A stretch of 64,000 bases of DNA from Phallusia mammillata. Taxonomy: Eukaryota. The stretch covers positions 682,001 to 746,000 of the forward strand of contig OZ281494.1 in NCBI GenBank assembly GCA_965637545.1, written 5' to 3'. Within the stretch, counting starts at the first letter, position 1, and each line of letters begins with the position of its first letter. Shown here piece after piece: positions 22,001 through 53,100 of the stretch. Under the pieces are notes generated by a model. It searched no databases, was not told where the DNA came from, and was given only the letters and a program-made list of their open reading frames with translations. The position numbers and the translations under genes are program-made.

Positions 22001-22746
22001 TATTGGATCGGCGGGATTGTAAAAAATATAAACTCTCTCTAAATCTAAACGATACTACGATTACGTGATTTTTCTCTATTCTAAAAATAATGTACAATGT
22101 GTTCATTTAAAGCTAAGCTTATACGGAACTATGGTTACAACATAGTCTGTTGTTGAAATATAATCTATTTACTGTTTCATTATTTTACATCCTAACCTGT
22201 TGTGTATTTGTCTGTCATGAGTTGAGTGAGAGTTGTGTTGATCTGTGGGTCATCAGTCATTGCAAGATTTCCACCCAGCAAAGAACATTTCTCCTGTGCA
22301 GAGTTTGCATCCACAAGATCGTCAGATAATATCAACACACTGTCCTTTACTGCTTTCAGTGTCTTGTTGCAACCTGAAAGTAAAATCGTATGCGTTTTCT
22401 GGAGATTGGTATGTTTCTCCTTCATTGCTTTCATGATTTGTTGTATTTAATCGGTAATTTAAATCCCTCGAGCCATTGCTTTTTTTAAATTATTCGTTTA
22501 TTCTATGCCTTAGCTTTAGGTGATACCTCTTGAGCTTCTAGATTAAAAATGCACAAAACCTTAAAAAAAATTAACATCCACACGTGCAACACCTTTCAGT
22601 CAGTAATGTTGCTCCATTACTATTTGTTTTATCAATTGTTCTTACATTATTATTGGTTTTTGTTGGACATACTTACTGTTGCTTTGTCCCGTCGAGTACT
22701 GAATCAAAACCAAAACCAAAATATTACTTAGATAATTTCCCTTCAT
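19011..22746 (-). CDS. Paralog B': CTLD-2xFN3-TM receptor with no phosphatase domains (short tail)
   Basis: Signal exon 22677-22746 (MKGNYLSNILVLVLIQYSTGQSN); CTLD/insert exons ~22198-22374, 21911-22043, 21748-21857, 21190-21354, 20910-21104; FN3 exons between 19680 and 20650; TM exon 19349-19545. All open and in phase. No PTP exon lies between the TM exon and the paralog-B upstream region. The terminal exon ending at 19011 (SLANDVLLAPTK*) is tentative. Confidence 0.8.
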
Positions 22747-27500: not shown

Positions 27501-30500
27501 GGCTAGTACAGGAAAGTAATGACCTCTTAATGCTGGCCGTTCGTACACTTTTAGATTTTCGTTTTGGCTGGTATTTCTTGAAAAACATGTTGTGACTTTA
27601 ACAATCAGATAGTCAATTGACTTGTCTCCAGCACAAATGAAACAAAAAAGAACAAACGTCTGATATAACCACCTTTGGGTTGCCTAATAATTTCTGATTT
27701 GAACAAGAAAACTATAAGAATGCAAAAAGCAGTGCACTGTTTATAGATATCATGAGTTATACCGCCAGATCTATTTAAATTTCATGCGTTTTCTGGAAGA
27801 AGTAGAAACAAAATGAAACACTGTCAAAACATATGTCCATTCCAATAAAATCTGTCTTTAACACAGGTATGTTTGAGCGCAAGTGTAATGCAAACAACAT
27901 CGATTTGATGTTTATCTTGTTTGTTTGGAAATCGGGTGTCTATTTAACGGAAAATATTTACCTTTTCACTATGTTTACACAATGTGTTTAAAGCATACGT
28001 TGTAATCCAGCCTTCAGCCATTTATTTGCTGGTCGATAACGAAACAGCCACGTTTAGATTTCTGTACTGGAATAATGCACAAGACATAATCCGCAAAACT
28101 TTATTATTGCCTTTGTGTGGAATAAAATTGTGACAAAATACTCTCGCATGTAATGTTGGGTACAGTTGCTTACAAACAACAGTGAAATTGAACAATTTTT
28201 TGTCATAAAAGTTGCTTAGACCCTAGTCGCTGTGAGACCAATTTACTGATTTGTTATTCGACTTTACCATATTGCCAACTTTAATACTTACACGGGAAAA
28301 TGTTCTTGTAGCGGTTTTTCACAGCGTTTTGCGGCAACTGTGACACGTCCCTTGTCCTCTGGTTGTTTTTGCATTGGTTTTGGATTTTCTAAATTAAAAA
28401 TAAGTATTGTGTAAATGATAACATCCCAAAATATCGTTTTTATTTACGGCATCTTAAATTTTACGAAAACAAAAACGAAATTAACCACTTATAAAAATAT
28501 CGGCGAAAGCGAAACCACCATGACATGTTATATTGCCTACACAGTATACTAACCATATAGGCATTGATTTGCATCAAAACAAACCTCAAATTCGTTGGCA
28601 AAAAGAAATCCCGACTCAACATTTTTCTTGAACAACTCAAACAAGTTCGAATTCGACCTGGCTTCATGCGCTACGTTTTGGTAGGCACCGTTTCCAACTT
28701 AAAACAATTTTTGTTTAATATTCGCAAAGAAACGACTCTATCGCTATGATTTAAACATTTGCACGATTGTAAGAAATAAAAACCCACAGTATCTGCACAT
28801 TTTTGTGCGTGAAAGTGTTTAGCAATTTACAAGTTAAAGCAGTTTTTATGTTTTTTTATTGTTGGTAGCACACAGGAAGAAATCGTCAAGTAAGAATGTA
28901 AGTAGCTACCTGGTGGTAATCGTGAAGAATTATGATAAGAAACTTCTGCTTGTAAAGGTAGATCCTTGCTTGGTCTGTAAACGCAATAGAACAGTTTCAC
29001 TTATAAAGAGTTTTTATTTCCAATGAAAATCCCATGTAAAAGTTTCACTATTTTAGAACACACATTGTTTTATCTTTATGTTGGTGCGTGAGGATCAGTG
29101 GATAACAATATATCATGCATCGACTGAAGCTATTACCCAAATGCGTGGTGAGCCAAATCAATTGTTGACAAACCTTTGTCTTCGACGAATAAACATGACC
29201 ACCAGCCCAACAATGACAAATAACAGAAGCAACAGCCCGATCACCACACCAGCAATCAATGCAACATTCGTTGCAGGATTGGCGGTGTTATTTCTAGAAA
29301 AACAGCTTGAAGTGGGATTACCGGGAGTTGTTACTGTCAGATTGGATGTGATGTTTGTGTTGATTGAACCAGCGACAATCACTGCAATCTAGAATACAAA
29401 GAGTAAATTGACAATTACTGTGACCTGCGGTACAAAACATGGTTGGTTTAGTATTTATGATTTGTTTTGTTAGCTTAATACTGAAAGAAAACTAGACTTA
29501 CCTGAAATTCATACAAAGTAGAATGAACGAGACTTCCTATTTCTGTAGATTTATTGAAATATGGAACAGAGGTTGTTTGATTCAGTCCATGGACATAAAG
29601 CTCAACCTGTATGTGGTTTCAGAGGTTCAAGTCAAATTATGACAGATTATAACAAAACTTTGTTTAATATTCAAATGCACAAGAATTAAACATCAACACA
29701 CATGTTCTCGCACCTGTGCTGTTAAATTGTTTCTGTTGATAAATTATTTAAGTCCAGTCCAACTGACAAGCACAATTGAAGCGTTGCATGGGAAAATCTG
29801 TGCCGTCGCGTTTACTACAATTTCGTTGCATTGAAAATGTTAATATTATTTGGAAATCTACATGAACGATCACAGTTCGCCAGGCCCATTAAAGGCGTCA
29901 TACCGAATCAGCCGGTCACCAAGTATTCACCACTATATTACAAGGCGAAGTCTAGAAAAATCTATAGATATATAGCCTGCGGTGGGAATTGAACGATTTA
30001 TGTTTTGCTCTGCATCGTTTACGTCTGGTATATGCATTTGGATTACAATGTATTAAAGCAATACCGCTCAAATTTCTTGCTCAGAAATACTAGAATAATC
30101 AGGACAAGGTTAGAACTGACAACTTTGTGAGCACTGACCAATCAGCCATCAAGTAAACACTTTACTCGCTGCTCAGAAAGAAATATTACCTGGATATTTA
30201 ACCGGTTTTATTTCCGTAAAGAAAAAGAGATTTACCTTTAGGATAGCAGCTTTGAGGGGGATTACCCGGAGTTGTTACTGTCAGATTGGATGTGATGTTT
30301 GTGTTGATTGAACCATTGACAAACACTGTGATCTTAGTAAAAAAAACAGTACAAAATAAACTTTATGTTTCACATTCTTTTTAATAGACAATAAGTTATT
30401 TTTCTGTTTAACCACTTCTAAAGTAGCTGACCTGGAATTCGTAGAAAGTGGAGTAAGTAAGATCTTCTATATACGTGGAATTGTCTGAATACGGAACAGA

Positions 30501-32758
30501 TATTGTCAGATTAAAATCCCTGACGCGAATCTCGACCTGCATGTTTGTGACATATTTTTCATTTGATAAGAAACAACGACAAAAATGTATGTTTTACTAC
30601 CTGAGCTGTTAGATTGTTAATGTTGATGAATTGGTCAAGTCCAGTCCAACTGACAAGCACAGTAGAAGCGTTGCATGGAAATATCTTTGCAGTCGCGTTT
30701 ACTATGAACAACGTTGTTAAAGGTGGAAGTAGTAAATAGTTCCTTATAAATAATTGGAATTGAATATTCAACATAACACGTTGGCTTGCACAGAATCGCT
30801 TACTAAAACATATTTCCTATGCATGTTACTAATTTTAAACGAAACTTGAATCCATAACAGTAATAGGAAAACCACAATCCAGGCTGGGTAGTGAGCGATT
30901 ACAGGTTTTGTTGTTTTATAATTACTTACGTTTTACTTGACAAGCGTAGTAAGCCGGTTCACCACTGCAGTTCATGCTTGACTGCTCCCATCCGATCCCA
31001 TAATGCAATGCTCCTTGCTGGCAAGTTGTAACGTTGGAAACGGGAAAGTTTGCCGGAGATCCGTCGCCCCAATACCAACCATTTAACGAAGTGTTGTAAC
31101 GAGCTCCGATCAGAACATTGATATCTTAAAAATGCTTGTGTTGGTGTACCCAAATCATCATGGTTGTTTTTGCGTTTTTTTTTAAAAATATAATCGCTTA
31201 CTTGGTGTCAGAAACGATCCTTTGGAAATGTTAAAACTTTCATATGACGCATTAACACTTCGCAATTTATACGAATTTATGCCACCGTTGTAGTTAAATA
31301 TTTCTTTTTGGCGTTTCCTCTTGGTAGTGTCGGAAAACAAAGAAAACTGTAAGGTCCATCCTGCAAATATCACATATTGTAACAAATGTGTCTGTTGTTG
31401 CTGACTAAATGAAACAGCTAAAACTATTAATTTGCAATCGGCTTCTTTGCGATATCTAAAGTAACTGATTTGTTTCAACTCACACCGTTCCATTTTCCTT
31501 CACTATCCGGCCCTTCACATGTTGTCCCAATATCTACTCTCCACTTGTAATCCGGTTCTGTCCAAGCATCGCAGAAATAAATGGATTCCATCGTATTTTT
31601 GACATTACTGTTGGACAAAAGTGGTTGTGTTAATTTTGACAAACAAATTTGAAACATTATTTGTCGTCAAATAATCTGATAAAGTTTTTAACCTTTCATA
31701 CAAATCGAAATACCACAGATGTCCAAGAGATTTTGTACTTTTCCAAGGATACACTTCATTCAAATTATACGAGTATTTGTATCGCCTATTTTCGTCTTCG
31801 TAAAAAATATAAACCCGCTGTAAATCTGAAACAAATGTTTATTCAATATATTAAAAATTACAATTAAAAATGTTTTTTTATTTATAAAAAGCCACCACAA
31901 ACCTGTTGTGTATTTGTCTGTCATGAGTTTAGTGAGAGTTGCGTTGATCTGTGGGTCATCAGTCATTGCAAGATTTCCACCCAGCAAAGAACACTTCTCC
32001 TGTGCAGTGTTTGCATCCACAAGATCGTCAGATAATATTAACACACTGTCTTTCACTGCCTCCACAGTGTTATTGCAAGCTAAAAAATCAATTCGCGGTT
32101 AGTTTACATTTTTCCTAAGTAATGATTATGTACTTTGTAATCCAGAGTGATTACGCTCTGAAGCAAAAACACAAACACTATTTATGATTTTTACTGTTAC
32201 TAAGAAGGACGAACGTGACTTTGAACAACAATACTATGGTCCATCCCAAACTGTAATTCGGAAGCAAAGATACTTCAGATGCTTTTGTATTTGTTTCATG
32301 ACACCAAAATGCGTAACGTTGGTTTCGTGAGCAAAACGTTTCTTTGTCGACCAAGTTAAATGTCCGATGTCTATTTTCATAATAACTTTCTTTAGTTTGT
32401 TTAGAGCTCAAACAGGGCTGGGTTACGCAACTACCGTACGATGATTTATAACAAGGATGATTTTAACAGATGTAACCAACTTCCATCGATGTAATCAGCT
32501 GAATTTAAAAAAATCGCAAAACTTTTGCTAGAAATGCCAATGCCAGAAACAATTCATTTTTGTTGGAGAACATTTGTTTAATTCCTGAAGTATGAAAGTA
32601 AAACACTATTTTTGTACAGTAAAAAATACTTCAAAAAACTTTTATTTCATGTATTTAACGCTAGTAGGCTACTTACTGTTTGCTTGTCCCGTCGAATACT
32701 GAATAAAAGTTAAAACCAAAAATGTCCTCAAGTCATTACTCTTTATAGCTGAGAGCAT
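24526..32758 (-). CDS. Paralog C: complete receptor-type PTP (split CTLD, 2xFN3-like, TM, D1, D2), 27 exons
   Basis: Signal exon 32677-32758 ([27 protein letters not shown]); CTLD exon 1 31903-32079; insert exons ~31692-31824, 31490-31610, 31203-31360; CTLD exon 5 ~30930-31124; two FN3 triplets; TM exon 29174-29388. D1 has KNRYKNIFP (~28290-28388), [38 protein letters not shown]2 ends FDTYSNYK* at 24526. Confidence 0.9.
29870..30030 (-). mobile_element. tRNA-derived SINE copy in an intron of paralog C
   Basis: The reverse complement gives a B-box remnant GTTCAATTCCCACCGCAGG and body GACCGGCTGATTCGGT..ACGCCTTTAATGGGCCT, matching the SINE at 61209-61470. Confidence 0.7.
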
Positions 32759-35099: not shown

Positions 35100-38000
35100 A
35101 TGCTTACAAAAAGAACGCCTAAAAAACCTCAAGGAAACGCTCAATGTAAAGAACAACCTATCCCCTGTAAAAAATCATTGGATACAAACACCCAACTGCC
35201 ATATTCCTCCCTAACACATATCGAACTGTCTAATCTATTTGCCACCCATGATACAGACACCATCAACTCTATTTTTAACTGCAATGAAAATTTGAACCCT
35301 GTTGATCAATGTGACAATGATTGCCTAAATGAAGAAAACTCTTCTGCCTGTCACTATGTTTTATCAAATAGTATCCCAGCAAATGCTCCTTCCAAAGGTA
35401 GTTTCTCAGCAATGTGTATTAATATTAGATCATTAGTAAATCCTAGAAACTTTTCAAAGCTTGAATGCTTGATCAACAACATGAATATTAAACCAACAGT
35501 CATCTGTGTAAATGAAACTTGGATTAAGAAAAATGCTCCTGGTGTTCATTGTAATCTCCCTGGCTATAATTTTATATCAAACAGTCGTACCATCAGCAAT
35601 GGGGGAGGAGTAGGTTTATATGTTAACAATAATGTATCATATTCTATATGTGATAATCTTACCATTATGAAAGAAAAAATATTTGAATCTATTTTTATCC
35701 AAATTGCTTTTCCACATACAAAAATCATATGTGGAACCATTTACAGGTCACCAGGACAGGACCACAAAAGCCAAACTGACTTTCTGGATACATTAACTAC
35801 GTCACTTTCAGTAATACACAATAAGAAATCTCCTACTTATATACTTGGAGACTTTAACTACAACTTACTAGACGCAAACAACAGTCATGTTGATAGTTTT
35901 ACCATGTCACTTTTTGATAAATCATTTATTCCTCTGATCAACAAACCTACACGAATTACAGACACATGTAGTACATGCATTGACCATGTATGGACAAACA
36001 ACCACAAACACAAAACCACCAACAGTATATTGCTAGATTCCGTGTCAGACCATTTGCCTGTCATAACGTGCACAGATATAAAAACAATAAAGAGTGCGGA
36101 GGCCGCTAGACAACGAAATTTTTGTAAGAAAAACATTGATAGATTTAAATTGCTACTTGAAGAAGTCGATCTTTCACAACTTATGACCCAAAATGACCCC
36201 AACATTGCTTATAGTTTATTAACTGGGATAATTGACAAACATTTTGCAAGTTGTTTTCCATTTAAATTAGCAAAACCACCACATGAAATCAACACATGGT
36301 TTGATCAGGATCTACACAGTTTACACCTTTTTAAGCAAAACTTATACAGAAAGTACATGAATAAAAAGACAGATTGTAGAAAGGAAAAATACAACAAAAT
36401 ACGTAACATTTACACACATATGCTGACTAAGAAAAAACAGGACCACTATCACACATTGTTTTCTACTATAAAACAAAACAGCAAACAGACATGGGCCACA
36501 ATCAATAAATTGCTTGGGCGGGTCAAAACAAAATCATCCAGTCCAATATTAATTGATGGATATGCTACTACTGAAGCCAAGGAAATAGCCAATCACTTCA
36601 ACCAATACTTTGGCACGGTTGCTAAAAATCTAGCCGCAAAATTAGATCCCCCAAACAAACCATATCATTCTTACATGACAAAAGTCTGCCCGGATTCCAT
36701 GTTCTTATACCCAACCTGTCCTGGTGAACTTGGTCAAATCATACAATCCATGAAACCTAAAATGAGTTGTGGCTTCGATGAAATTCCTGTAAAAGTTATA
36801 AAAAGTTTTGGTGAAAATGTAAAACTTGGACTAAGCCATGTTTTTAACTTGTCACTCCGGTCTGGTACATTTTTAAGTGGTTTTAAAGAGGCAAAAGTAA
36901 TTCCAATACATAAGAAAGGTGATAGGAAACTAGTATCAAACTATCGACCAATAAGCTTGCTCTCAAACCTATCCAAAGTACTAGAAAAACTAGTTTACAA
37001 TAGAGTATATTCTTTCTTAAGGTCAACAAACTTTTTCACTGACTGCCAATTCGGCTTCAGAAAACAACACTCAACTTGCCATGTTACAACCAAATTAATA
37101 GCGGATGTTACTGAGAGTTTAAACAATAAGCATCATACCATGGGCATATTCCTTGACTTATCAAAAGCTTTTGACACAATTGATCACAATATAATGATAA
37201 ATAAACTGTATTCTTGTGGGATTAGAGGTGTGGCACTGGATTGGTTTGAGAGCTACCTTAATGGTCGATCACAACGAGTTTTTTATAATGGTTCTATATC
37301 ATCTAATAAAATGGATATTCCACTAGGAGTCCCCCAAGGCTCTCTGTTAGGTCCCCTACTTTTTATTATATATGTCAATGACCTTCCGAGTTGCTTGCAG
37401 TATGGCTCTCCTCTAATGTTTGCTGATGATACGACTATCATAATAAGTGCAAAATCTAAAAATGAACTGGAAAAAAGGGCTAACTTAGAAATGGAAGCTA
37501 TATATAATTGGTTGGTTGCAAATAAACTCACCCTAAATATAAGCAAAACCAAAACAATGGTGTTTCATTCAAGTGGACATCATACTGTAAATGTGGCCAT
37601 CAAAGGTAAAAATCTTCAACAAGTACAATCTCTGTCATTTTTAGGTGTAATCCTCAATGAAAGGCTGTCTTGGAAGGAGCATATTAATAAACTTTATCAA
37701 ACATGCAAGCGTAACCTTGCAATTGTGATAAAAATCAAAAACTATTTGAATAGAGACACCTTGTTAAGTTTGTACCATTCACTGATTATGCCTCACATTC
37801 GTTATTGCATAACAAACTGGCATCATGGTCAATCTGTACTAATTTCCAAATTACAGGGTATCTGCAGTAAATTCATTAAAATCATTTTTGGTGTTAGGGG
37901 CTCTCACAATGTCGAAAATGTGATGAGAAATAATGGCTTGCTCACAATTAACCAGCTTTATATGCTTGAAATATTAACTTTTATGCACAAGCATAACAAT

Positions 38001-38231
38001 AACATACTTCCAGCTATTTTTGCTGATTTCTTTAAGACCAACGTTACAACTATTTCGACACGTTCCAATTCTAACTATTTGAAACCTTTTGTTAGTGGTA
38101 GTGTCCATCAGCAATCTATGCGATATATTGGCCCAAAAGCCTGGAATGACATTCCGTCAGATCTTCGAAATGCCAGTTCAACAAGACAATTTATTGCAAA
38201 CGTCACTTCGTTTTGTTCACACGAGTTTTAA
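35100..38231 (+). CDS. LINE ORF2: apurinic-like endonuclease plus reverse transcriptase, 1043 aa, uninterrupted
   Basis: APE motifs NIRS, VNETW, GGGVGLYV, GTIYRSP, GDFN, TCIDH, SDHLP. RT motifs NYRPISLL, QFGFR, FLDLSKAFDTIDH, GVPQGSLLGPLLF, FADDT, FLGV. C-terminal SMRYIGPKAWNDIP. Confidence 0.97.
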   Translation: MLTKRTPKKPQGNAQCKEQPIPCKKSLDTNTQLPYSSLTHIELSNLFATHDTDTINSIFNCNENLNPVDQCDNDCLNEENSSACHYVLSNSIPANAPSKGSFSAMCINIRSLVNPRNFSKLECLINNMNIKPTVICVNETWIKKNAPGVHCNLPGYNFISNSRTISNGGGVGLYVNNNVSYSICDNLTIMKEKIFESIFIQIAFPHTKIICGTIYRSPGQDHKSQTDFLDTLTTSLSVIHNKKSPTYILGDFNYNLLDANNSHVDSFTMSLFDKSFIPLINKPTRITDTCSTCIDHVWTNNHKHKTTNSILLDSVSDHLPVITCTDIKTIKSAEAARQRNFCKKNIDRFKLLLEEVDLSQLMTQNDPNIAYSLLTGIIDKHFASCFPFKLAKPPHEINTWFDQDLHSLHLFKQNLYRKYMNKKTDCRKEKYNKIRNIYTHMLTKKKQDHYHTLFSTIKQNSKQTWATINKLLGRVKTKSSSPILIDGYATTEAKEIANHFNQYFGTVAKNLAAKLDPPNKPYHSYMTKVCPDSMFLYPTCPGELGQIIQSMKPKMSCGFDEIPVKVIKSFGENVKLGLSHVFNLSLRSGTFLSGFKEAKVIPIHKKGDRKLVSNYRPISLLSNLSKVLEKLVYNRVYSFLRSTNFFTDCQFGFRKQHSTCHVTTKLIADVTESLNNKHHTMGIFLDLSKAFDTIDHNIMINKLYSCGIRGVALDWFESYLNGRSQRVFYNGSISSNKMDIPLGVPQGSLLGPLLFIIYVNDLPSCLQYGSPLMFADDTTIIISAKSKNELEKRANLEMEAIYNWLVANKLTLNISKTKTMVFHSSGHHTVNVAIKGKNLQQVQSLSFLGVILNERLSWKEHINKLYQTCKRNLAIVIKIKNYLNRDTLLSLYHSLIMPHIRYCITNWHHGQSVLISKLQGICSKFIKIIFGVRGSHNVENVMRNNGLLTINQLYMLEILTFMHKHNNNILPAIFADFFKTNVTTISTRSNSNYLKPFVSGSVHQQSMRYIGPKAWNDIPSDLRNASSTRQFIANVTSFCSHEF

Positions 38232-39027: not shown

Positions 39028-39648
39028 TCTTCCTTCCGGCGCTTGAAACTATCCGGCAGGGTTTCTTTCGGTGGTTTCTTTTCCTGTCGAACCCCACCCT
39101 CCTTCCTAACACGGGTGGTTAGATTCTAGGGCCCCCTCGACTGGTCCCACCAACGTTCCCCCCCCCCAGTCGTGTTATACTCACAGTGCGCCTAACTCAC
39201 TTTCTGGTGAGCTCCTGCCACATAACGCCTTATAATACGGTGTAGCTGCAGCGCGTTTAATCATGATCCACCAATTGTGCCCTCCACTTTTTTGCGCCCC
39301 ATAACGTCTTAACGTTGCGCAGCTATTTCCGGCTTGGTGATTGTCTTTAGTGCAATTGTGTCGCTATGTTTTCTTTTCACCAAGCGAAATAAACTCAACT
39401 CAACTCAACTCAAACAAAGATGCTTTACTTTCTACAAAAACAGCTTTTTATACATTTGTTTTGCAAAATAATCAAATTTATTTTAAAACTTTTACGAGCT
39501 ACTACCCAGCGGAAAAGCTTTCGGTACAAACACTACAGACAAACTAAAAAACAATTTTAAAGCATTTATCATTTTAAGAAACTAAATTGACAATTTTATT
39601 GAAGAAACTAAGTGGATACAACTGATAACAAATTAAAAATTAAACTAG

Positions 39649-42600
39649 TTATGTTTTTGTTTCGTATGTAGGGTTTTCATTTGTTGCTCTGTAGTTTTCG
39701 TATTCATGTTGATCTGTAGTTTTGTCGTCAGAGTTTGCTGCAAAACAGATTGTAAATTCCATTGTCAACAGTTTGAGGCTTTTAACTCATACAATAAGTT
39801 ATTGGATGTGTAATGTGTTGGGTTCAAACTTTGTACGATAAACTTGAGTCTTTGCAGCAGAAATTTTTCTTACCTTCGTTACTCTGATGTGGAAACTGTT
39901 CCTGAGTCGCTTGTTTTTTTTAGATGCTTTACTATTTGAAGTTCTGTGGAAACAAATTTTGCTTATTATGGTGCTCTGTGGGAAAAACGAGTGTTTGGAA
40001 TTGAAATTAAGTTGGGACAGCAATCGGACCTAGAGTTTGTGGTTCTAATCTCTAACTGTTTCGAGTTTAAACAAAGTAAACAAATTGCTCAGCTGGTGGA
40101 ACAAAGGTAATTAAAACAGCTGCGATTGCAGGCACCTGCGTCTTCGGCGAATAAACATGACTATTAGCCCAACCATGACAAGGAGCAGAAGCAAGAGGCC
40201 GATCGCCAAACCAGCAATCATTCCAACACTCGTTGCAGGTAAACCGCACGAAGGGGGATTACCTAAAGTGGTTACTGTCAGATTGGATGTGATGTTTGTG
40301 TTGATTGAACCAGTGATAATTACTGTGACATGCAATACAAAGATGTTTTGTTGTTGTACGTGATAAACTATAATGGCATGTGTCAAAAACCGACGGATTA
40401 TAATTCTACAAAAAGTTACTTACAAAAATATGGTATGAAATAGAAAGCAAGAGATCTTGAATTATTGTCGTGTTATCTGAATACGGGACGGAGATTGTTT
40501 GATTCAAACTCATGACAACAATCTGAACCTGCAGCAAGGTATAAGTTTGTTTCAACAATTTATGTTTGTCGACTAGAAATCAAACCAAAAGCAACACACA
40601 ATATATTTTGTACCCGTGCTGTTAAATTGTTGTTGTTGATGAATTGGTCAAGTCCAGTCCAACGAACAAGCACAGTTGAAACGTCGCATGGAAATGTCTC
40701 CGCAGTCGTGTTCACTACAAAAATCGTTGTTAAGGTTTGGACACGGTAAATGTTTCCTAACTCTTGGAATTTAATATACCACACAACACGTAGCACGCTT
40801 GCTTACCTGGTGAATAACAACTTGATGGAGGCTTTCCAAAAGTTGTTACTGTTTTCGATGTTGAGACGTTAGTGTTCAAGCATCCGGTAAGCATTGTAGT
40901 GATCTGAAACGTTTAAGCTGTATCACTTAAATTATGCCTTCAATTGAAGCATTCAAAAATTAAGAATCAAGGTCTGGACTTTTAATTTTTATAGGCACTG
41001 ATACGATGCTCTAACTTGACAAATAATTTGTACTTCTACTATACATTGCTTACGGTAATGTAGTAATTAGTTGCTAAACTTAGGTTTTCGATGGTTGTCG
41101 ACAGAATAGCATATGGTGCAATGAATTTTCTGTTCATTTCCAAGACATAAATTTCAACCTAAACGAAACATTTGTTAAAATCAAGAAGTTAACGGACGTA
41201 TATAAACTGTATGTCACTTCTGCATAAAGTTTATTGTTGCGGATGAATTGATCAAGTCCAGTCCAACTGACCAACACAGTTGAAGGGTTGCATGGAGTTG
41301 TATCCATAGTCGCTTTAACTAGAAAAAAGTTTAAATTAAATATTCATGAAAAGCATATTGTCTAGCGACACGATATAAAAGTATGTGCAAACATATTTGC
41401 AAAAAGATCATTGGAACACAAATTAATGTCAAGAAGACATTTACTTGTTTTTGCTGACTGATTTACTTGAAATTACTCACATTTCACTTGACAAGCGTAG
41501 TAAGTCGATTCACCACTGCAGTTTATGCTTGACTGCTCCCATCCGATCCCATAATGCAACGCTCCCTGTTGACAAGTTGTAACGTTGGAAACGGGAAAGT
41601 TTGCCGGAGATCCGTCGCTCCAATACCAACCATGTAACGACGTGTGGTAACGAGCTCCAATCAAAACGTTAACGTCTGAAAAAGAAATGGCAAATACTAT
41701 TTATGCACAACGATAGGTTTTGCATGTCTGGTGCCTAAATGTTGTTGGGTACCCACTTTCCGCCAAGAACGATCCCTCATATATGGTGAAGTTTTGAAAA
41801 GTTTCGTTGACACTTCGTAACTTGCTTGAACGTTTTGGTTTTCCGCGTCTATAGTTAAATACTTTTTTTCGGCTTTTTCTGGTGTAAGTGTCGGAAAACA
41901 AGAAAAACTGTAATGTCCATTCTGTAAACAAACATAAATTAATCAAATAACAATAAATGAGCCTGAGATCTTTTTTATTGACATGGCAATAGGGTAGAAA
42001 TCAAGGTTTGAAACATGGCAGTTACGTTTTGTATTGAGTTTTCGTTCTTTGTGAATGGCTGTATAAACAAACCCACTTTTTACGTACCAGTTTGTTATTA
42101 TGAAAAATAAAACATTTTTTTTTTAAACAAAAAACGGTTACACACAAATTTTGGGTTATTTTTCATACACACATTTTTTTAAATACATAGATTTGACATC
42201 TGCCTTATATAACGGTTAACTAAATTACTAAGTTTATTCACACTAACGGTTCCAATCTCCATTGGGCGCGAGGCCACTGCAATTTCTTCCAATAGTGACA
42301 TTCCACCGCTCATTGACAGTGTTTCTCCCATAGTCGCAAAAATAAATTGGTTGACTTTGGTTTTTAGGATTGCTGTTGAAAAAAATAAAGTAAATATATG
42401 TATATATATTTACATATGTATGGTTACGATTTCCATGGTTGCTGTTAAATGTGTTTACTTGATTAGCAGACCGAAATACCACAGATGTCCGAGAGATTTT
42501 GTACTTTTCCAGAAATCCTCTTCAGCCGAATTGTTTGAGTATTTGTATCGTTCATGTTTGTCTTCGTAAAAGATATAAACCCGCTGCAAATCTGTTTTTT

Positions 42601-43049
42601 GAGTTTTTTTTTGCAATGCAGTTCAACATGAGCATTTTTCAACAAAAAGTAACTACGCATTTACAGCCTTTCACGGGTTTTGAGTGCCGTTGAAGCATAT
42701 CTGTCTGAATAAACATAAGTGCAAACCTGTCGTATATTTGTCTGTCATGAGTTGAGTGAGAGTTGTGTTGATCTGCGGGTCATCAGTCATTGCAAGATTT
42801 CCACCCAGCAAAGAACATTTCTCCTGTGCAGTGTTTGCATCAACAAGATCGTCAGATAATATCAAGTCACTGTCCTTCACTGCTTGATGAGTATTTGTAC
42901 AACCTGTCAAAAAGCCTTTTTTAGAAAAAAAAATTTTTTTTGGTTTTTATAATAAGTTATATTTGGTTTCGATGTAACTTACTGTTGTGTTGAGTGTGTG
43001 AGTAGTGAACAAGAAACAACAACACCACAATCTTGTGACCAGATATCAT
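39649..43049 (-). CDS. Paralog D: CTLD-2xFN3-TM receptor without PTP domains, with a Tyr-motif tail; carries a splice-acceptor lesion and a possible 1-nt frameshift (may be a pseudogene or a secreted variant)
   Basis: Signal exon 42983-43049 (MISGHKIVVLLFLVHYSHTQHN); CTLD/insert and FN3 exons are open in phase down to ~40423. TM exon 40136-40329 has AT instead of AG at its acceptor. Tail exons 39874-39943 and 39649-39737. Confidence 0.72.
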
Positions 43050-43530: not shown

Positions 43531-43660
43531 CGCAACCGACCGCACGATCCTGGCAGGGTACGTCCTGTTGCATAAGACGGTAGTTGAACTCGCGAGTTTT
43601 GTTGGCCTAATGAAACCCGCCTTAACAGGAAACTTCAGCGCGGTTCCTCGGAACGTTTCC
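43531..43660. repeat. 130-bp direct repeat, left copy (partner 45752-45881)
   Basis: 4 mismatches in 130 nt by direct comparison; more GC-rich than its surroundings. Confidence 0.92.
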
Positions 43661-45754
43661 TTGTTACTGTTGCATTGGATGTGATGTTTGTGTTTATGGA
43701 ACCAGTGACAATCACTATGACCTGAAATCACAAACATACCTTTTGTTTATGTACATGTTAAGTTACGGTCTCCGGAAAAGTTTATTAACGTTATTTCGCT
43801 GCTAAAACAGTGCTTGTTCAATTAACAAAAACACAGGCGACAGGCTTTTACCTCAATGACATACGAAGTAGAGTGAGTGAGATCTTGTATTGTTGTGGAG
43901 TAATCAAAATACGGAGCAGAGACTGTTTCATTCAAACCGTCCACTTGAATTTTAACCTGCATGTATAGTGATATCAAATAACCGTTTAGTTATCGTTTAG
44001 TTCAAACTTGGTTTAAACCTGAGCTGTTAGATGGTTGTTGTTGATGAATTGATCAAGTCCAGTCCAACTGACAAGCACAGTTGAAGCGTTGCATGGAAAA
44101 GTCTCTACAGTCGTGTTTACTGCAATGTAAATAGGAAAGAAGCGTTGTGTCAGGATCTTAAAATTTGTGTTTGCTTAAATAGTTTTCTCACTTTTGCGTA
44201 ATTGTGGTTGCGAAACAGTGATATGTTTTTTAAACTATTTTTAATTTCCATAACTTCAGTGCTACACGAAACCAAATTACATTTCTTTTCTGCGATAATT
44301 TTTACCTTTTGGGTAACAGCTTTGGGGGGGATTGCCCGGAGTTGTTGCTGTCAAACTGGATGTGATGTTTGTGTTGATTGAACCAGTGACAATCACTGTG
44401 ACCTGGAATACACAAACAACGTAAATACATGAAAATGTAAAACAGAAGGTGTCCTGAAACTACTTCGAATAACTCAAATAAGAAAAAAATGTTTTCACCT
44501 GAATTTTATAGCATGTTGAATACTCTAGATCTTCTATCAAAGTCGGATTGTCAGAATATGGAACAGAGATTGTCTCACTTGAACCCTCGATTTGAATCAC
44601 AACCTGCATGTAGTTTCGTTTTGAATGGTGGTTTAACAAACACAAACTTGGTTTAAACCTGTGCTGTAACATCGTTGTTGTTAATCAATTGATCAAGTCC
44701 AGTCCAACTGACAAGCACAGTTGATGCGTTGCATGGAAATGTCTCTGCAGTCGCGTTTACTACAAAAATCGTTGTTGAGATTTAAATTCAAATTTCTGTA
44801 CGTGGCTTGTTCGCTTACATGTAGGATAGCAACTCGATGGGGGATTTTCATATGTAGTTACCAGTTTTGATGTTGATACATTAGCAGTCAGACAACCAGT
44901 AAACATTGTAGTGATCTGAAATTATGAAATGGATTTAATTTTACTATAGTTATCAGCCCATGTTCTTTATATAGAGTTCCTGTATAAAAATCTAAGTTTG
45001 ATTACGTTAAACCGTTATTGCACATTTGTTTTGACCACGTTCTTTGGAAAATGAAATAATTATTTGGTACCTGCCGCCAAACAGCGTACTGTATTTGAAT
45101 AAAAAACAGTAGCGATTTATAACATTAAGATGTGATAAAATTTATAACATACTTACAATCATGTTGTACTCTGTTTCAAAGCTCAGATTTCCAATGGTTG
45201 TGTTTTGATCTGCATACGGTGCTAAGATTCTCTTGTTTATTTGCAAAACATAAATTTCAACCTAAAAAAATATGAAAGAGTTCATACCAAAATATCCAAT
45301 AAACTTGTTGCGATGAAACATTACCTCTGCATCAAGTTTGTTGTTGTTAATAAATTGATCAAGTCCAGTCCAACTGACAACCACAGTTGAGGCGTTGCAC
45401 TTAAATTGCTCCACGAAAGCTGTGACTAAGAGCGAGACATAAGTTTAATTGCGAATGGCTGGAGAAAGTTTTAAAGTTAGCAACTTTTCCCTTCACATCA
45501 CATCACAAGTAATACACTGTATCACTAAATCGCAAAAGATTGTTTGACTTGTGCCTAAGGTGTAATTCGAAACAAATGTTTGGATCAGTGAGTACAAAAA
45601 CAAATCACATTAATATTACAACTCAGACTATGGTTCAGCTAATGTTAATAATTTTGGGTTGTAATTACTTACACTTTACTTGACAAGCGTAGTAAGCCAT
45701 TTCGCCACTGCAGTTCATGCTTGACTGCTCCCATTCTATCCCATAATGCAACGC
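43661..45754 (-). pseudogene. D': orphan ectodomain fragment (3' half of CTLD exon 5 plus FN3 repeats 1-3, last exon truncated)
   Basis: Exons and introns align closely with paralog E 52910-54170. It starts mid-exon (ALHYGIEWEQ) and ends mid-exon (NITSNATVT). No signal or TM exon. Flanked by 130-bp direct repeats. Confidence 0.85.
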
Positions 45755-45881
45755 AGCCGACCGCACGATCCTGGCAGGGTAGGTCCTGTTGCATAAGACA
45801 GTAGTTGAACTCGCGAGTTTTGTTGGCCCAATGAAACCCGCCTTAACAGGAAACTTCAGCGCGGTTCCTCGGAACGTTTCC
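45752..45881. repeat. 130-bp direct repeat, right copy (partner 43531-43660)
   Basis: Same sequence as the left copy; continues as unique GC-richer DNA to ~45990. Confidence 0.92.
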
Positions 45882-45999
45882 TGTGATCCTGTAAACAGGC
45901 CTGGGTGCACGAGGACATCCTTTAGCGCGATGAAAATGTTGCCATCGAGCATCTATTCCCCACGGTTTGTAGAATCGAAGGCGAGATCTAGTTCATTGT

Positions 46000-47126: not shown

Positions 47127-50100
47127 TCATTGGAAGTTTGAATAAGTGTCGAAATCAGACAGATATTGCATGACGACCGAGTAGCAGTATTTGTACAGTT
47201 CCTGTCAAAATAAACTTTATTTGAAGAGATGTCTACTTATCTCGCCTTAGCCCAAAGAAAAACGTTACCTTGTTGTCGACCATATTCGGCCTCATATCTC
47301 TCAGGTCTTTCACAGTTCGGAATACATCCACCCGCTTTTGTGCCTTCAAACGTTCGAGAATGCTGACCAGAGCGATGAAGGTTCCAGTTCTTGTTGATCC
47401 GTTGCTGGAAACATATCAATATATATTTATCTTGTCAACATATTTATGATTTAGAAACTTTCATTAGCAGTCCACTTTTGACTAGATAACAAATAGTTGT
47501 AGCGAATCTCCTTGTCTTGTGTCAACTGAAAACATAATTTTACCTGCAGACAACCAGCACATATTGACAAATCTGTTTGGCCTTTAGCCGTTGCATTTCC
47601 TCGATAATTTTGATGAAATCCATTTCTTTCGGGGGTCGTTCCACGTCATTCCATCCCTTGACTTGCAGAAGCATCAATTGAGTATCAGCCTGAAAACAAT
47701 TAAAGCTAAGTTTCATTATGCATGTTATAAAACTGGTGTTTAAATGTTAAAAGTCGGTATGTTGATCCGAGCAGTTACGCAAATTTTGAAATAATGCTAT
47801 GTTGTGAAAGGTATTTTTGGGTTGTTTTTTGATAGATTATGTACTGATATGTTTTCACACATTAGACCACCACAAACTTTGTAGTTTAGAAGCAATGCTG
47901 TTCTAAAGTTTTTAACTTACAAAAGCGTTGGTTGTTGACCAAACGTCAACAGTTGTCAGATTGTGGACATTGCTTTCATTTACATCACATACAGAAACCG
48001 AAATATCTTCGTATTGTAAAGCTGCATTCACTGGAATCTAAAAACAATTTTATGTTTTAATACGTAAAGAAATTGTGATTTGAAAAAATGACAGTCTTAC
48101 ATTAATGCTATTTTCCAAATCAATGACAACCATAGCTTTTTTCTCCACAATCATCTTCCAGAAATTTTCTTTTTCTCCAGCAGCAGGATTTTTTGCAGCA
48201 ATGAAACATTCTGAAGATCCTTGTTCCTGTATTTAAAACTGGATTAAAGTAGACTAAAAGAATCAGCTAATAACAATGTTTTGTCACAAGTGCAAAGATC
48301 ATTTAAATTCTGCCGTGCATGTAAAGCATTAAAAATTGTTGACATTGTACCTGGACGGTTTGCTACTGATCTATGAGTGTAAAAGTATTGATACAATACA
48401 TACGCCACCAATTGAAATTGAAACCGTGATGTGATTTGAAACATTCTATTTTGTATTATCACCTGAATATACGAGGCATCCAGTTGCTGTATAATCTCAA
48501 GTTTTTTGTTCCAAATTTTTACTGCTGTGTTCTTATCTGAACACAATATTTCATGTGCTTTAAAGGTCAAACATTGTGACAAATTCACTTACATGTTCTT
48601 AACTGTGGGTGATTTTCCTGCCATTCCTCGCCAAATCGCCACACTGACAATGTTTTGAATTCTTGCTCTTGCATCTTCGTGCTGCAAAACAAAAGCCTAA
48701 TGCGCGCTCACATGTAAAAGCTGGTAGCAGTTTAAACAATAAACTCAACAAAGTGACAACTACCAATGTGGTACACCCACAAAATGCTTGCAAGGAATTA
48801 AAATTGTATACTAGTAATGAGCCATGTGTTGTGATTAAAGAACAACAAAATGAGTTACATTTCACTTGAGGTCATCGATTGTAGTTCTGTCACATCTTTA
48901 TCTGTTTCAATTAAGTTCTCACGCTCCGTGAGAAGTTTGTAGACGTACATGTATTGTTTCTGAAGAAAAACAAATTTAGAAAAAAAAATCTATGATTGAC
49001 GTTGCTGGTCTTAGTTGCATCATATGCCCCCCCTCTAGAGCAGTTAACATGTGGAATTTGTGCCCAATTCCTTCTTGTCGTTTTTTTATAGTTAAGTTAA
49101 CGTTGGCAGCACATTACCGAGTTTTGAATCATGTCTGTTCGGTTTTCTCTCATTCTTAACACAGTTTGTGGCACATCAACTGTTCCTTTGTCGTCAAGTT
49201 CTTGAAACAAAGTGTCCATCGCTATGTAAGTACCTGTGCGTCCCACTCCAGCACTGCATTTAAACGTTGGGTTTACTGATTGGTCAAAATAACACAGGGT
49301 TTGTCAAGTCTTTACCTGCAGTGCACAATGATTGGAGCATTTGTGTTTTGCAAATCATCGACCATGTTACGCAGGTGGATCATGTTGGATGTAGTTACTG
49401 GAATTCCATGATCGGGCCAAGTTGTAAACTGCAACTGTGTTATGAAACGTTGCTCCTGAGAACGAAAACAAGTAATTGCATCAATTATTACGTCATTTTT
49501 ACTGAAAAAGGAACGTGTCACCCACACGCCGTGCAATGTGTGAGTCAAGAAAACATTAGGTAACGAAATTTTAGGAAGACAAATACTAGTTTGTTGATCA
49601 TTTACGTTTTATGGTTACATTTTCGTTATTTACACAAACCCTGGTTGTGGATAATTCGAACTGTCGATATGTGATTCCTCCGAGACTTGTCTCATGTTGT
49701 GTTCGAACTTCCAGATTCGACGACAATTTGATTTTGGAGTCCATATCAGGCCAATATTTTTCACACTTTGTCTGCAGTTAAAATATATTTTGTTATTTCT
49801 AGACCAGTGGTTCTCAACCCGTTTCAGGCCATGGACCACCGACGCAGCAAAAACAATATCGTGGACCATTACATTTTTAAGCAAGATTGAAGTAGGCCTA
49901 TAAAATAATCATGTTTGCTTGAAACATAATAATTCAAAACCTATTTACAATAACATAAAAGTTATTGTCCACGATCACTGAGTCAAAACTTATTCACTAA
50001 ATAAATAATTAGGAAGCAAATGCTTTTGACTCAAATTCAGTAGACACTGAAAAGAAGTGAGATTAAATAACTGACAACAAACACGCTGACCGTTTTTCAA

Positions 50101-53100
50101 AATACAATATGCGAAAAACAGTTTTTCACCAAGTTTAGTAGACGTCCTGTGGACCACCCAAAAACTCTTCGTAGACCACTAGTGGTCTATGGACCACGAG
50201 CTAAGAACCACTGGTTTAGACAAACAAAATACTCGTTTTCCATTAACTCCGTGGCAGATTTGATTTTGTCAATCAATGAATATTTGCCACATAACAAACT
50301 CAACTCTTCCTTTTTCCACCAAGCCAGTAAGCATTACGATGATGTTGGAGTTTTCCTGCCAAACCATCAACCAGAAATCGTTGATTGTCTCCTTCTTCGG
50401 ACCCTGAGTGGCGATGAACTTCCTCGCGTTATCGTAACCCGGTATATAAGCGGCGTTGATGTAATCATTTTCACCGCTTCCTTGCAAAACTACTCGGGCA
50501 TGATCGTCTATTGAACAAACGCCATTAATACTGAGATTCATTACACCTGCAGAAGTGTTACAACAAACATCCACTGTAGCCAATAAGGTATCACATTAAA
50601 CTAATACAAGTAAAATAGCAAAACCAACTATCCTAATAAAAATAATAAAAACAAAACAAAAAATGAGGATGTGAATTGTGTTATGTCGCGGAAACAAATG
50701 TGCAACAGCTATGCCAGTAATAAATCAAGGGATTTACAACACAACAAAGTGACTTTTCCCGAGACTTTGATCAATAGGAAATCAGCCAATTTCATATACT
50801 AATTTGTTAAACTCATTTGTATTTTGTATTTCAATACTTACAAGGGAAAATATTCTTGTAGCGGTTTCTTACAGCATTTTGCGGCAATTGTGACACGTCC
50901 CTTGTTCTCTGGTTGTTTTTGCTTTGGTTTTCGACTTCCTGAAATGGTTAAATCCAGTGAAAGGAGTTTTCAAGGTTTGATTGTTTTCTTGTTGAATTGC
51001 TTGGACGTAAATGTTGATTATAGTTTTCTCTAACCTTAAATTCGTTGACAAATAGTAGTCCTGACTCAACATTTTTCTTGAACACTTCAAACAATTTGGT
51101 GACTCTGCAGTTTTTTGAGGGGACAACAGAAGGAGATAGATTTTCGTATATCACGGGTCCTGTTGAAACCATTATGTACATTTCAGCATGGCTCTATGGT
51201 ATTGTTTTCATCAATTTTGTGAAACTCTATTAGTTAATTAGCAACTTTCGATAGAGAAAGTTACCTGCGGGTGACATTTGCGATGAAAATTCCACGTGTG
51301 AAGGCGGATCTTTATTATTTCTGCAAAAGCAGAACAGCTTTGAGTTAAACTTTTTTAGTTGGTCATGTTTCTATTTAATTGTTCTAAATTTCAGTTCTGA
51401 ATAATTCGTGATCTAAATTTCAGTCGGTGGTAAAAATTTGGTTACCGGGCATCATGAGCAGAAGAATTTTGTCCAAAATGTTTTGATCAAAAATATCTAA
51501 AACATATTTATGTTTTGTGAGCCAAATTAGTTAATGACAAACCTGTTTCGACGTTTAATCATAACCACCAGCACAGCAATGACAAGTACCAGAAGCAACA
51601 GCCCGATCACCAGACCAGCAATCATTCCAACACTAGTCCCAGGATTTGTTCCAGGATAACAGTTTGGAGGGGGATTTCCCAGAGTTGTTACTGTCAGATT
51701 TGATGTGATGTTTGTGTTGATTGAACCAGTGACTATGGATGTAATCTGTGATACAAAAAAATAATTTCAGTTTAATTTTCAACAAAACGATTTTTAAGAT
51801 TTTTTTCTGTTTATTTTTGCTTGGTCAAATATGAAAGAGAACAAGTCCTTACCAATATTTCATACAAAGTAGAGTGAAGGAGATCTTCTATCATAGTTGA
51901 TTTATTGCAATAAGGAACAGAGATTGTTTGATTCAAACCCTGGCCTTCAATTTCAACCTGTATGTAATTTGGATGCAATGATGAATTTAGTTTTTTTTTC
52001 AGCAAAATTGTCACACTTTCAGGTTTGTTTATCAAACAATGAAGACTCAAAAAACAACAACAAAGAGTTTCCAATAGACCTGCGCTAACAGATCGTTGTT
52101 GATGAGGAATTGATCAAGTCCAGTCCACCTGACAAGCACATTTGAAGCGTTGCATGGAAATGTCTCTGCAGTCGAGTTTACTGGAATGAAAAATTTACTG
52201 TTTCTGTTTTACAAAACTTGCAGTAATTCAACAAATATTGCAGGCGTTTTAAATATCGTGTTTGTTAATCACTTGTCTGCATTTCATATGTCTGTTTAAT
52301 TTTACGAAAAATGTTACCTGCAGGATAGCAGCTTTGCGGGGGAATACCCGGAGTTGTTACTGTCACATTAGATGTGATGTTTGTGTTGATTGATCCAGTG
52401 ACAATTACTGTGACCTGAAAGACATCAAACACGTAACTAGTCTTGTAGGTTTCACCTTAAATGTGTTAAATCAACTCTCAATGGAAAAAAATTCACCTGA
52501 ATCTCGTACAACGTTGAGTGACTGAGATCTTCTATTAAGGCCGAATCGCTAAAGTACGGAACTGAAGTTGATTGGTTTAAACCCTCGATGTTTATCTGAA
52601 CCTGCATGTAGTTTGGTTACAAATATTTGTTTGAGAAACACACAAACTTGCTGTCAACCTCCGCCACGAGCTCGTTGTTGTTGATGAATTGATCAAGTCC
52701 AGTCCAACTGACAAGCACAGTTGAAGCGTTGCATGGAAATGTCTCTGCAGTCGTAATTACTGCAATACATAATAATAAGCCACTGATTATGGATTGCAAA
52801 GTTAGAGAAACACTTTGCCTGTTTCTTACAAATTGGGGTCGCTAAATACTTAAAAAATTGCATCAGTGTTTACCTTCAGGGTAACAACTTGAAGGGGGAT
52901 TACCCGGTGTTGTTACTGTTGCATTGGATGTGATGTTTGTGTTGATTGAACCAGTAACAATCACTATGACCTGAAATCACAAACATACCTTTTGTTTATG
53001 TACATGTTACGTTCCGGTTTCCGGAAAAGTTTATTAACGTTATTTTTCTGCTAAAACAGTGATTACTCAATTAACAAAAACACAGGCGACAGGCTTTTAC

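What the first reader, a model, noticed from the sequence alone, without database searches (positions are those of the whole stretch)
39649..39943. Paralog D replaces both PTP domains with a short YEN + NPxY tail that is one adenine out of frame
Seen: two exons follow the TM exon. The last one, read in phase 1, gives NSDDKTTDQHEYENYRATNENPTYETKT*. The preceding exon is 70 nt with an A8 run (39914-39921 on the minus strand). The corresponding exon in B, C and E is phase 2-1, which would need 71 nt (A9). As assembled, the tail reads a Tyr-free alternative frame (..QTLTTKLQINM..KHN*). Known: pY-x-N binds Grb2-type SH2 domains; NPxY binds PTB domains and drives endocytosis. Inference: D is or was an adaptor-recruiting or endocytic counterpart, and A8/A9 is either a homopolymer assembly error or a slippage switch.
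Basis: partly seen in the sequence, partly recalled or inferred. Interest (0 to 1): 0.72.

Follow-up and report, generated by a model that had tools for sequence, protein, structure and literature searches.

The report
Phosphatase-less receptor copy, tail frameshifted
One copy in a row of lectin-like receptor tyrosine phosphatase genes has lost its phosphatase and kept a short tail of tyrosine docking motifs, but as assembled that tail is one base out of frame at a run of eight adenines, and no reads were available to tell a real mutation from an assembly slip.

Summary
After the transmembrane (TM) exon of paralog D come a 70-nt exon (39943-39874, A8 at 39921-39914) and a last exon (39737-39649). 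The equivalent exon is 56, 56 and 65 nt in the three full phosphatases, all 2 mod 3. D's is 1 mod 3, so the Y-E-N / N-P-T-Y frame is missed by one base.

New here:
- D has 12 intact GT-AG exons (534 codons) from ATG to TM.
- It is an old duplicate (dS about 0.6). Its constraint matches that of the full phosphatases (dN/dS about 0.3).
- No phosphatase remnant lies downstream.
- A YxN tyrosine sits in the same exon and phase in all four genes, so the tyrosine frame is probably ancestral.
- Nucleotide homology of the tail exons to the paralogs is not significant.

Not resolved: whether A8 is a real allele (my preference), an assembly error, or bypassed by a weaker 41-nt exon. A regulated "switch" has no support, since no frameshift-stimulating structure was found. 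Passive polymerase slippage at A8 is documented in human genes.

Earlier scan notes, which I could not check, describe the same tail type at other loci of this genome: one intact copy and two with frame defects.

The parts
42983..43049 (-). D exon 1: ATG (43049) and signal-peptide-like hydrophobic start
   Evidence: sequence; model; donor GTAAGT
42727..42903 (-). D exon 2: first part of the lectin-like domain
   Evidence: 84-90% aa identity to paralogs
42459..42591 (-). D exon 3
42248..42372 (-). D exon 4 (insert in the lectin-like domain)
41757..41921 (-). D exon 5 (insert; holds an in-frame A7 run)
41481..41675 (-). D exon 6: last part of the lectin-like domain (WYWSDGS...YYACQ)
41218..41318 (-). 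D exon 7 (stalk repeat)
41054..41158 (-). D exon 8 (stalk repeat)
40807..40903 (-). D exon 9 (stalk repeat)
40614..40756 (-). D exon 10 (stalk repeat)
40420..40528 (-). D exon 11 (stalk repeat)
40136..40322 (-). D exon 12: membrane-proximal stalk, uncharged TM helix, RRRRR stop-transfer; ends in phase 2
39874..39943 (-). D exon 13, 70 nt; paralogs have 56/56/65 nt (2 mod 3), this is 1 mod 3
39914..39921 (-). A8 run (followed by CAA); the only homopolymer of 8 or more in D's coding exons
39649..39737 (-). D last exon up to TAA of the tyrosine frame; Y-E-N-Y at 39702-39691, N-P-T-Y at 39675-39664
39645..39647 (-). TAG stop of the frame as assembled (in the last exon)
39595..39600 (-). AATAAA, 49 nt past the TAA
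39933..39973 (-). Hypothetical alternative 41-nt exon (GAG acceptor, ATA|GTAAAG donor) that would reach the tyrosine frame with the DNA as assembled

Best explanation
D is a long-kept, selected, phosphatase-less member of a lectin-like receptor / tandem-PTP family. It keeps the family's signal peptide, split lectin-like head, stalk repeats and TM helix.

After the TM exon it keeps only the two small juxtamembrane exons. The second of these ends in a stop and a poly(A) signal instead of running on into the phosphatase. The ancestral reading of that last exon is the tyrosine frame (Y-E-N-Y, N-P-T-Y).

In the sequenced haplotype the frame is broken by a one-base deficit in the 70-nt exon. The simplest cause is a genuine A9-to-A8 replication slip. 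It would be a young allele, and may be polymorphic.

Because the new stop is in the last exon, the mRNA should be stable. It would give a membrane-anchored receptor with a basic, tyrosine-free tail of about 54 residues, that is, a non-signalling or decoy form. Passive RNA polymerase II slippage at A8 could restore the tyrosine tail in a minority of transcripts.

Shown: the anatomy, the phases, the intact body and the constraint on it. Inferred: where the base is missing, that it is real, and every statement about signalling.
For: - Intact body: 12 GT-AG exons, 534 codons, no stop.
- D against each paralog: dS 0.58-0.69 and dN/dS 0.29-0.38 over 466-491 codons.
- Changes unique to D: 23 non-synonymous against 17 synonymous. 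The three full phosphatases show 24:11, 24:16 and 25:13, and the other phosphatase-less copy 18:15, so D shows no relaxed constraint.
- No PTP remnant between 32.1 and 40.1 kb. The neighbours' exons are true PF00102.
- Exon phases of the paralogs, with YxN in the same exon and phase in all four genes.
- The start of D's 70-nt exon (AAATAGTAAAG) matches 10 of 11 bases at the start of the 51-kb paralog's exon (AAATAATAAAG) in the TM-set frame.
- The 3' part of that exon, read in the tyrosine-side frame (EQFPHQSN), resembles DQYPQVNN of the 14-kb paralog (70 of 3000 shuffles).
- D's N-Y-R-A-T-N lines up in frame with N-C-R-V-T-K of the 51-kb paralog (10 of 300 shuffles).
- A8 is the only run of 8 or more in D's coding exons.
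- Strong sites flank both tail exons, and AATAAA follows.
- Slippage at A8 gives about 11% in-frame APOB transcripts, and A8TA2 about 39% for factor VIII, as cited in PMC12946587.
- Leads not checked here: earlier notes s1-364016 (an intact HEYENY-x8-YETIT tail 355 kb away) and s1-382224 (two tail copies with frame defects).
Against: - No DNA or RNA reads could be seen, so neither A8 nor the exon junctions are verified.
- Nucleotide similarity of the tail exons to the paralogs is not significant overall, and the exon-2 peptide comparison summed over the three paralogs is not significant either. The ancestral frame therefore rests mainly on position, phase and the YxN motif.
- Both frames of the last exon are open.
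- The base could be missing anywhere in about 25 nt.
- A weaker in-frame splice path exists.
- Protein and metagenome searches found no relative carrying this tail.
Confidence: 0.5

Rival explanations
1. Assembly error. The true sequence is A9, the exon is 71 nt, and D is an intact tail-type receptor ending in Y-E-N-Y and N-P-T-Y. When phosphorylated it would dock SH2 (Grb2-type) and PTB adaptors.
For: - The only homopolymer of 8 or more in the coding sequence sits exactly where one base is needed.
- All the other 12 exons are intact and under constraint.
- The tyrosine frame is open through both exons, with its motifs kept.
- An intact copy of the same tail is reported elsewhere in this genome (s1-364016, not checked).
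Against: - There is no sign of an error-prone assembly in the window. A 3.1-kb LINE ORF is intact, an A7 run in D exon 5 is in frame, and there are no Ns.
- Runs of 8 are short for consensus errors in modern assemblies. This rests on general knowledge, since the sequencing technology is unknown.
- Two other tail copies are reported with frame defects (s1-382224), which fits real decay as well.
Confidence: 0.2
2. There is no defect at all. The real second cytoplasmic exon is 39973-39933 (41 nt, phase 2 to 1). It ends before the A run, so the run is intronic and the tyrosine tail is made from the DNA as assembled.
For: The path is open and in frame. Its acceptor follows the best polypyrimidine tract of the intron, and its donor is ATA|GTAAAG.
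Against: - It needs the second AG of CAGAG (a GAG acceptor). The first AG gives an immediate stop.
Confidence: 0.08
3. The tail does not matter. D works as a ligand sink or partner through its ectodomain and TM helix, the tyrosine frame is only a relic, and the tyrosine-free tail has been the product for a long time. That tail is either the as-assembled one or a 7-residue read-through tail after the TM exon.
For: - The ectodomain is under constraint while the tail is broken.
- The neighbouring phosphatase-less copy at 19 kb has an unrelated short tail with no tyrosine motif in frame, and its ectodomain is equally constrained.
- Frame defects are reported in two further tail copies.
Against: - TACGAAAAC (Y-E-N) is identical to the 14-kb paralog despite dS of about 0.6.
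- YxN plus NPxY in one open frame is rare by composition.
- An intact copy of the same tail is reported elsewhere.
Confidence: 0.12
4. Recoding switch. A8 is the functional state, and regulated transcriptional slippage or -1 ribosomal frameshifting on A_AAA_AAC yields two tails from one gene, a tyrosine-free one and a docking one.
For: - In the assembled frame the run reads AAA AAA AAC, which contains the canonical slippery heptamer. A -1 shift lands in the tyrosine frame.
- Polymerase II slippage at A8 and A9 is documented in human genes.
- Both products would escape nonsense-mediated decay.
Against: - No stimulatory structure lies downstream (z between +0.2 and -1.3).
- Any A8 run contains a slippery heptamer in every frame.
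- There are no RNA data, and no conservation of the run could be tested.
- Programmed frameshifting in cellular receptor genes is very rare (general knowledge).
Confidence: 0.05

Closest known systems
Paired receptor families (KIR, Ly49, Siglec-5/14, PILR, SIRP)
   Same: Tandem gene copies share one ectodomain but carry different cytoplasmic parts. Gene birth and death is frequent, and truncated or frameshifted members are common.
   Different: The inhibitory arm here is a built-in tandem phosphatase, not an ITIM. D has no charged TM residue and no ITAM. No opposite signalling has been shown.
Classical tandem-domain receptor PTPs (PTPRA/E, LAR/PTPRS group)
   Same: D's neighbours have D1 and D2 exons that hit PF00102 and solved RPTP structures. 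RPTP-alpha also carries a Grb2-binding Y-x-N tyrosine (general knowledge).
   Different: D itself has no phosphatase domain. In this family the YxN is juxtamembrane, not C-terminal. The ectodomain is lectin-like.
YENPTY / NPxY tails (APP, LDL-receptor family) and YxN adaptors such as LAT (YENL)
   Same: In the tyrosine frame D has Y-E-N and E-N-P-T-Y, the same residues as the APP motif. Docking of pY-x-N to SH2 domains and of NPxY to PTB domains is established for those proteins (general knowledge).
   Different: This is motif resemblance only. In D the two parts are 8 residues apart, the tail has no homology to those proteins, and as assembled it is not translated.
Frame restoration at A8-A9 runs in human APOB, F8 and DMD frameshift alleles
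   Same: A one-base frameshift sits at an A8 or A9 run (D: A8CA2; F8: A8TA2). There, polymerase II adds an A in roughly 10-40% of transcripts (PMC12946587).
   Different: Those are disease alleles with measured RNA. Nothing has been measured for D, and the organism is an invertebrate.

Membership tests
Classical receptor-type protein tyrosine phosphatase | At least one PTP catalytic domain (PF00102, HCx5R) | tested here: not met
   No PTP-like sequence between D's TM exon and the next gene (tblastx; motif scans). The neighbours do have it.
Classical receptor-type protein tyrosine phosphatase | Type I layout: signal peptide, ectodomain, one TM helix | tested here: met
   Hydrophobic N-terminus, 12 open exons, and an uncharged helix of about 25 residues followed by RRRRR. 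This is by reading the sequence; no predictor was run.
Paired activating/inhibitory receptors | Ectodomain shared with differently tailed neighbours | tested here: met
   41-90% aa identity exon by exon to four neighbours.
Paired activating/inhibitory receptors | Activating member has a charged TM residue or its own ITAM (YxxL/I-x6-8-YxxL/I) | tested here: not met
   The TM helix has no charged residue. The tail tyrosines read YENY and YETK, which do not fit YxxL/I.
Paired activating/inhibitory receptors | Opposite signalling on a shared ligand | not testable with these tools
   Needs cell experiments.
pY-x-N (Grb2-type SH2) and NPxY (PTB/endocytic) docking tail | Motifs present in the translated frame | tested here: not met
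   As assembled the tail has no tyrosine. The motifs are present only with one base carried over.
pY-x-N (Grb2-type SH2) and NPxY (PTB/endocytic) docking tail | Phosphorylation and adaptor binding | not testable with these tools
   Needs biochemistry.
Programmed -1 ribosomal frameshift site | Slippery heptamer X_XXY_YYZ in the zero frame | tested here: met
   A_AAA_AAC in the assembled frame. This is trivially true of any A8 run.
Programmed -1 ribosomal frameshift site | Stimulatory structure a few bases downstream | tested here: not met
   Folds of 40-120 nt of the spliced sequence are no more stable than shuffles.
Transcriptional slippage site | Run of 8 or more A; transcripts of mixed run length | tested here: inconclusive
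   Run length is met.
Decayed pseudogene | Disabling changes and relaxed constraint across the gene body | tested here: not met
   No stop or frameshift in 534 codons. dN/dS is 0.29-0.38, and D-specific N:S is like the full paralogs.

The most novel reading that the evidence does not exclude
The A8 run is kept on purpose. One gene would make two receptors, a tyrosine-free decoy and, through polymerase or ribosome slippage, a docking-competent form, with the ratio set by slippage efficiency. The frame defects reported in other tail copies of this genome might then be the same conserved recoding site rather than decay.
Probability: 0.06. Interest if true: 0.75.

Novelty: new member of a known kind. 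Interest (0 to 1): 0.4.

Why it matters
If the tyrosine tail is real, this gene is one of the docking-tail partners of a large, apparently undescribed sea-squirt family that puts one lectin-like ectodomain on either a built-in phosphatase or a phosphotyrosine docking tail. That would be a possible invertebrate counterpart of paired receptors.

Knowing whether the frameshift is an artefact, an allele or a leak decides whether D should be counted as a signalling receptor, a decoy or a dying gene. By itself, a one-base slip at a homopolymer in one copy of a birth-and-death family is ordinary.

Tried and rejected
A8 against A9 and the splice junctions remain untested.
- Exact look-ups of three window ORFs were not on record: the ORF through the A run, the TM ORF and the LINE ORF.
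- phmmer of the TM exon against 1.8 billion representatives gave one unrelated fungal membrane protein.
- The search for homologous proteins with the TM ORF and with the lectin exon found nothing. The length filter excludes full-length proteins, so this says little.
- A metagenome pattern scan across the A run and a related-loci scan with an alignment of five TM exons found nothing.
- Pfam on single lectin-like and stalk exons and on the 28-residue tail gave no hit.
- Local nucleotide alignment of the tail exons to the paralogs was not significant.
- Peptide comparison of exon 2 in both frames was inconclusive.
- I tested whether any canonical splice path reaches the tyrosine frame. Only weaker ones do.
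- Skipping the 70-nt exon gives S-K-L-stop.
- Programmed -1 frameshifting was rejected for lack of a downstream structure.
- An ITAM reading was rejected on motif grounds.
- Two literature searches for the family found no description.
- The joined spliced model of D was never sent to a search tool. Exons were searched singly by reference, and joining was done only inside local scripts for translation, counting and folding.

Full report
**Setting**

The window is AT-rich animal DNA (GC about 0.36, no N). It holds a tandem array of related genes on the minus strand. Self-comparison and motif scans give this map, in plus-strand coordinates:

| Coordinates | Feature |
|---|---|
| 1-6500 | 5' part of a further family gene |
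| 19347-23287 | phosphatase-less copy (B') |
| 24534-32087 | full phosphatase (C) |
| 35100-38231 (+) | intact LINE ORF (RVT_1 and endonuclease) |
| 39600-43049 | paralog D |
| 43531-45990 | orphan ectodomain cassette |
| 47135-57156 | full phosphatase (E) |

Exons of the full copies hit PF00102 and solved tandem-domain receptor PTPs. Earlier scan notes call the organism a sea squirt. I did not test that.

**The observation**

- The TM exon ends at 40136 in phase 2.
- A 70-nt exon runs 39943-39874 and has good sites (acceptor ...TTTCCACAG, donor AAG|GTAAGA).
- It contains A8 at 39921-39914.
- The last exon starts at 39737 behind TTTTGCAG.
- With one base carried over, that exon reads ...HEYENYRATNENPTYETKT-stop (TAA 39651-39649).
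- As assembled it reads a tyrosine-free Q/T/K-rich peptide that stops at TAG 39647-39645.
- AATAAA follows at 39600-39595.

In the three full phosphatases the equivalent exon is 56, 56 and 65 nt, always phase 2 in and phase 1 out. The next exon opens with G-x-V-[IT]-Y-E-N-L in two of them and with A-Y-Q-N-V in the third. D's 70 nt is 1 mod 3, where the family has 2 mod 3.

**Is the tyrosine frame meaningful?**

For:
- Y[EQ]N[YLVI] occurs only seven times in all six frames of the window. Four of these sit in the second exon after a TM exon, in the same phase.
- Shuffles of the last exon that keep its composition yield an open stretch with both YxN and NPxY in 0.03% of trials. The motifs were chosen after the fact, so this overstates the case.
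- Three short in-frame resemblances point the same way:
  - The 5' end of D's 70-nt exon matches the 51-kb paralog's exon start in 10 of 11 bases, in the TM-set frame.
  - Its 3' end, read in the tyrosine-side frame, resembles the 14-kb paralog (70 of 3000 shuffles).
  - N-Y-R-A-T-N lines up with N-C-R-V-T-K of the 51-kb paralog (10 of 300 shuffles).

Against:
- No nucleotide alignment of the tail exons to the paralogs is significant overall.
- The exon-2 peptide score summed over the paralogs is not significant.
- Both frames of the last exon are open.

I conclude that the tyrosine frame is probably ancestral. The offset arises somewhere between about 39925 and 39900, a stretch that includes the A run, which is the only homopolymer of 8 or more in D's coding exons.

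**Is D alive?**

I built the gene exon by exon. It has 12 GT-AG exons from the ATG at 43049 to the TM exon, 534 codons, with no stop or frameshift.
- Against each paralog, dS is 0.58-0.69 and dN/dS is 0.29-0.38 over 466-491 codons. D is therefore an old duplicate, not a fresh copy.
- Over 289 codon columns shared by five genes, changes unique to D are 23 non-synonymous to 17 synonymous.
- The three full phosphatases show 24:11, 24:16 and 25:13, and the other phosphatase-less copy shows 18:15.

D's outer part has been under the same constraint as that of the enzymes. A pseudogene of that age would be riddled with stops.

tblastx finds no phosphatase remnant between D's tail and the next gene.

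**What breaks the frame?**

Four readings remain.

1. A real A9-to-A8 slip in the sequenced haplotype.
   - Homopolymers are natural hot spots.
   - The rest of the window shows no sign of a sloppy assembly: the 3.1-kb LINE ORF is intact and an in-frame A7 sits in exon 5.
   - Earlier notes report frame defects in two more tail copies (unchecked).
2. An assembly error.
   - The base is missing exactly where errors occur, and everything else in the gene is intact.
3. A different exon.
   - An exhaustive search of canonical splice paths found that exon 39973-39933 (41 nt) reaches the tyrosine frame as assembled.
   - It needs a GAG acceptor right after a CAG that leads to a stop, and a weak donor 59 nt ahead of a strong one.
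4. The tail is dispensable, and the tyrosine frame is a relic.

I rank these 0.5, 0.2, 0.08 and 0.12, with 0.05 for a regulated recoding switch.

On the switch:
- In the assembled frame the run reads AAA AAA AAC, which contains the classical slippery heptamer, and a -1 shift would land in the tyrosine frame.
- That is true of any A8 run, however.
- The spliced sequence downstream folds no better than shuffles.

Passive slippage is another matter. Per PMC12946587, A8 in APOB gives about 11% frame-restored transcripts and A8TA2 in factor VIII gives about 39%. D's tract is A8CA2. Even a true A8 allele may therefore leak some tyrosine-tailed product.

**Consequences as assembled**

The stop lies in the last exon, so the mRNA should escape nonsense-mediated decay. 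It would encode the full ectodomain and TM helix with a basic tail of about 54 residues and no tyrosine. That protein could bind ligand but could not dock SH2 or PTB proteins.

With the frame restored, the tail carries three tyrosines in acidic context. Y-E-N fits the Grb2-type pY-x-N rule and E-N-P-T-Y matches the APP/LDL-receptor type PTB and endocytosis motif. Both rest on general knowledge of those motifs, and nothing was tested here.

It is not an ITAM (YENY, YETK), and the TM helix has no charged residue.

**Limits**

- All protein, metagenome and exact-sequence look-ups were blank.
- The joined spliced model was not sent to any search tool. Exons were searched singly by reference.
- Two literature searches found no description of the family.

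**Verdict**

This is a real, constrained, phosphatase-less receptor gene whose docking tail is one base out of frame in this sequence. The cause is unresolved, and a switch is not supported.

Noticed in passing
window 32200-32260 (-): In the signal-peptide exon of the 29-kb full phosphatase, the hydrophobic stretch ([16 protein letters not shown]) is one base out of frame with the only nearby ATG, and the frame from that ATG hits a stop after 14 codons. This could be another frame defect, or the start lies elsewhere.
   Followed up: partly
window 35100-38231 (+): An intact 1043-codon LINE ORF (endonuclease plus reverse transcriptase, Pfam) lies between D's 3' end and the next gene. It looks young and does not itself truncate D, since D's poly(A) signal is about 1.4 kb away.
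   Followed up: partly
window 18990-19360 (-): The other phosphatase-less copy (TM exon 19347-19563) has a tail unrelated to D's. After one splice an open frame runs about 45 codons to a stop, with tyrosine-containing text only beyond the stop. Its ectodomain shows the same N:S pattern as the full genes.
   Followed up: partly
window 39973-39977 (-): A tandem CAGAG acceptor sits behind the best polypyrimidine tract of the intron. Use of the first AG would give R-A-P-stop three codons after the TM exon, more than 50 nt before the last junction.
   Followed up: partly
window 43531-45990 (-): The orphan cassette between the 51-kb gene and D holds look-alikes of D exons 6-11 and the first 28 codons of the TM exon, but not the helix. 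It lies upstream of D's ATG.
   Followed up: no
window 47263-47421 and 10188-10346 (-): The second PTP domain has the signature (C/S)SNGSTRTG instead of CSAGVGRTG. In the 51-kb copy the in-frame residue before SNGSTR reads S where the 14-kb copy reads C, and the exon boundary was not resolved.
   Followed up: no
literature (PMC514892): A 2004 survey of Fugu C-type lectin-like domain proteins lists a protein tyrosine phosphatase (PTP-GMC1) among them, so a lectin-like domain on a receptor PTP is not without precedent in chordates.
   Followed up: no
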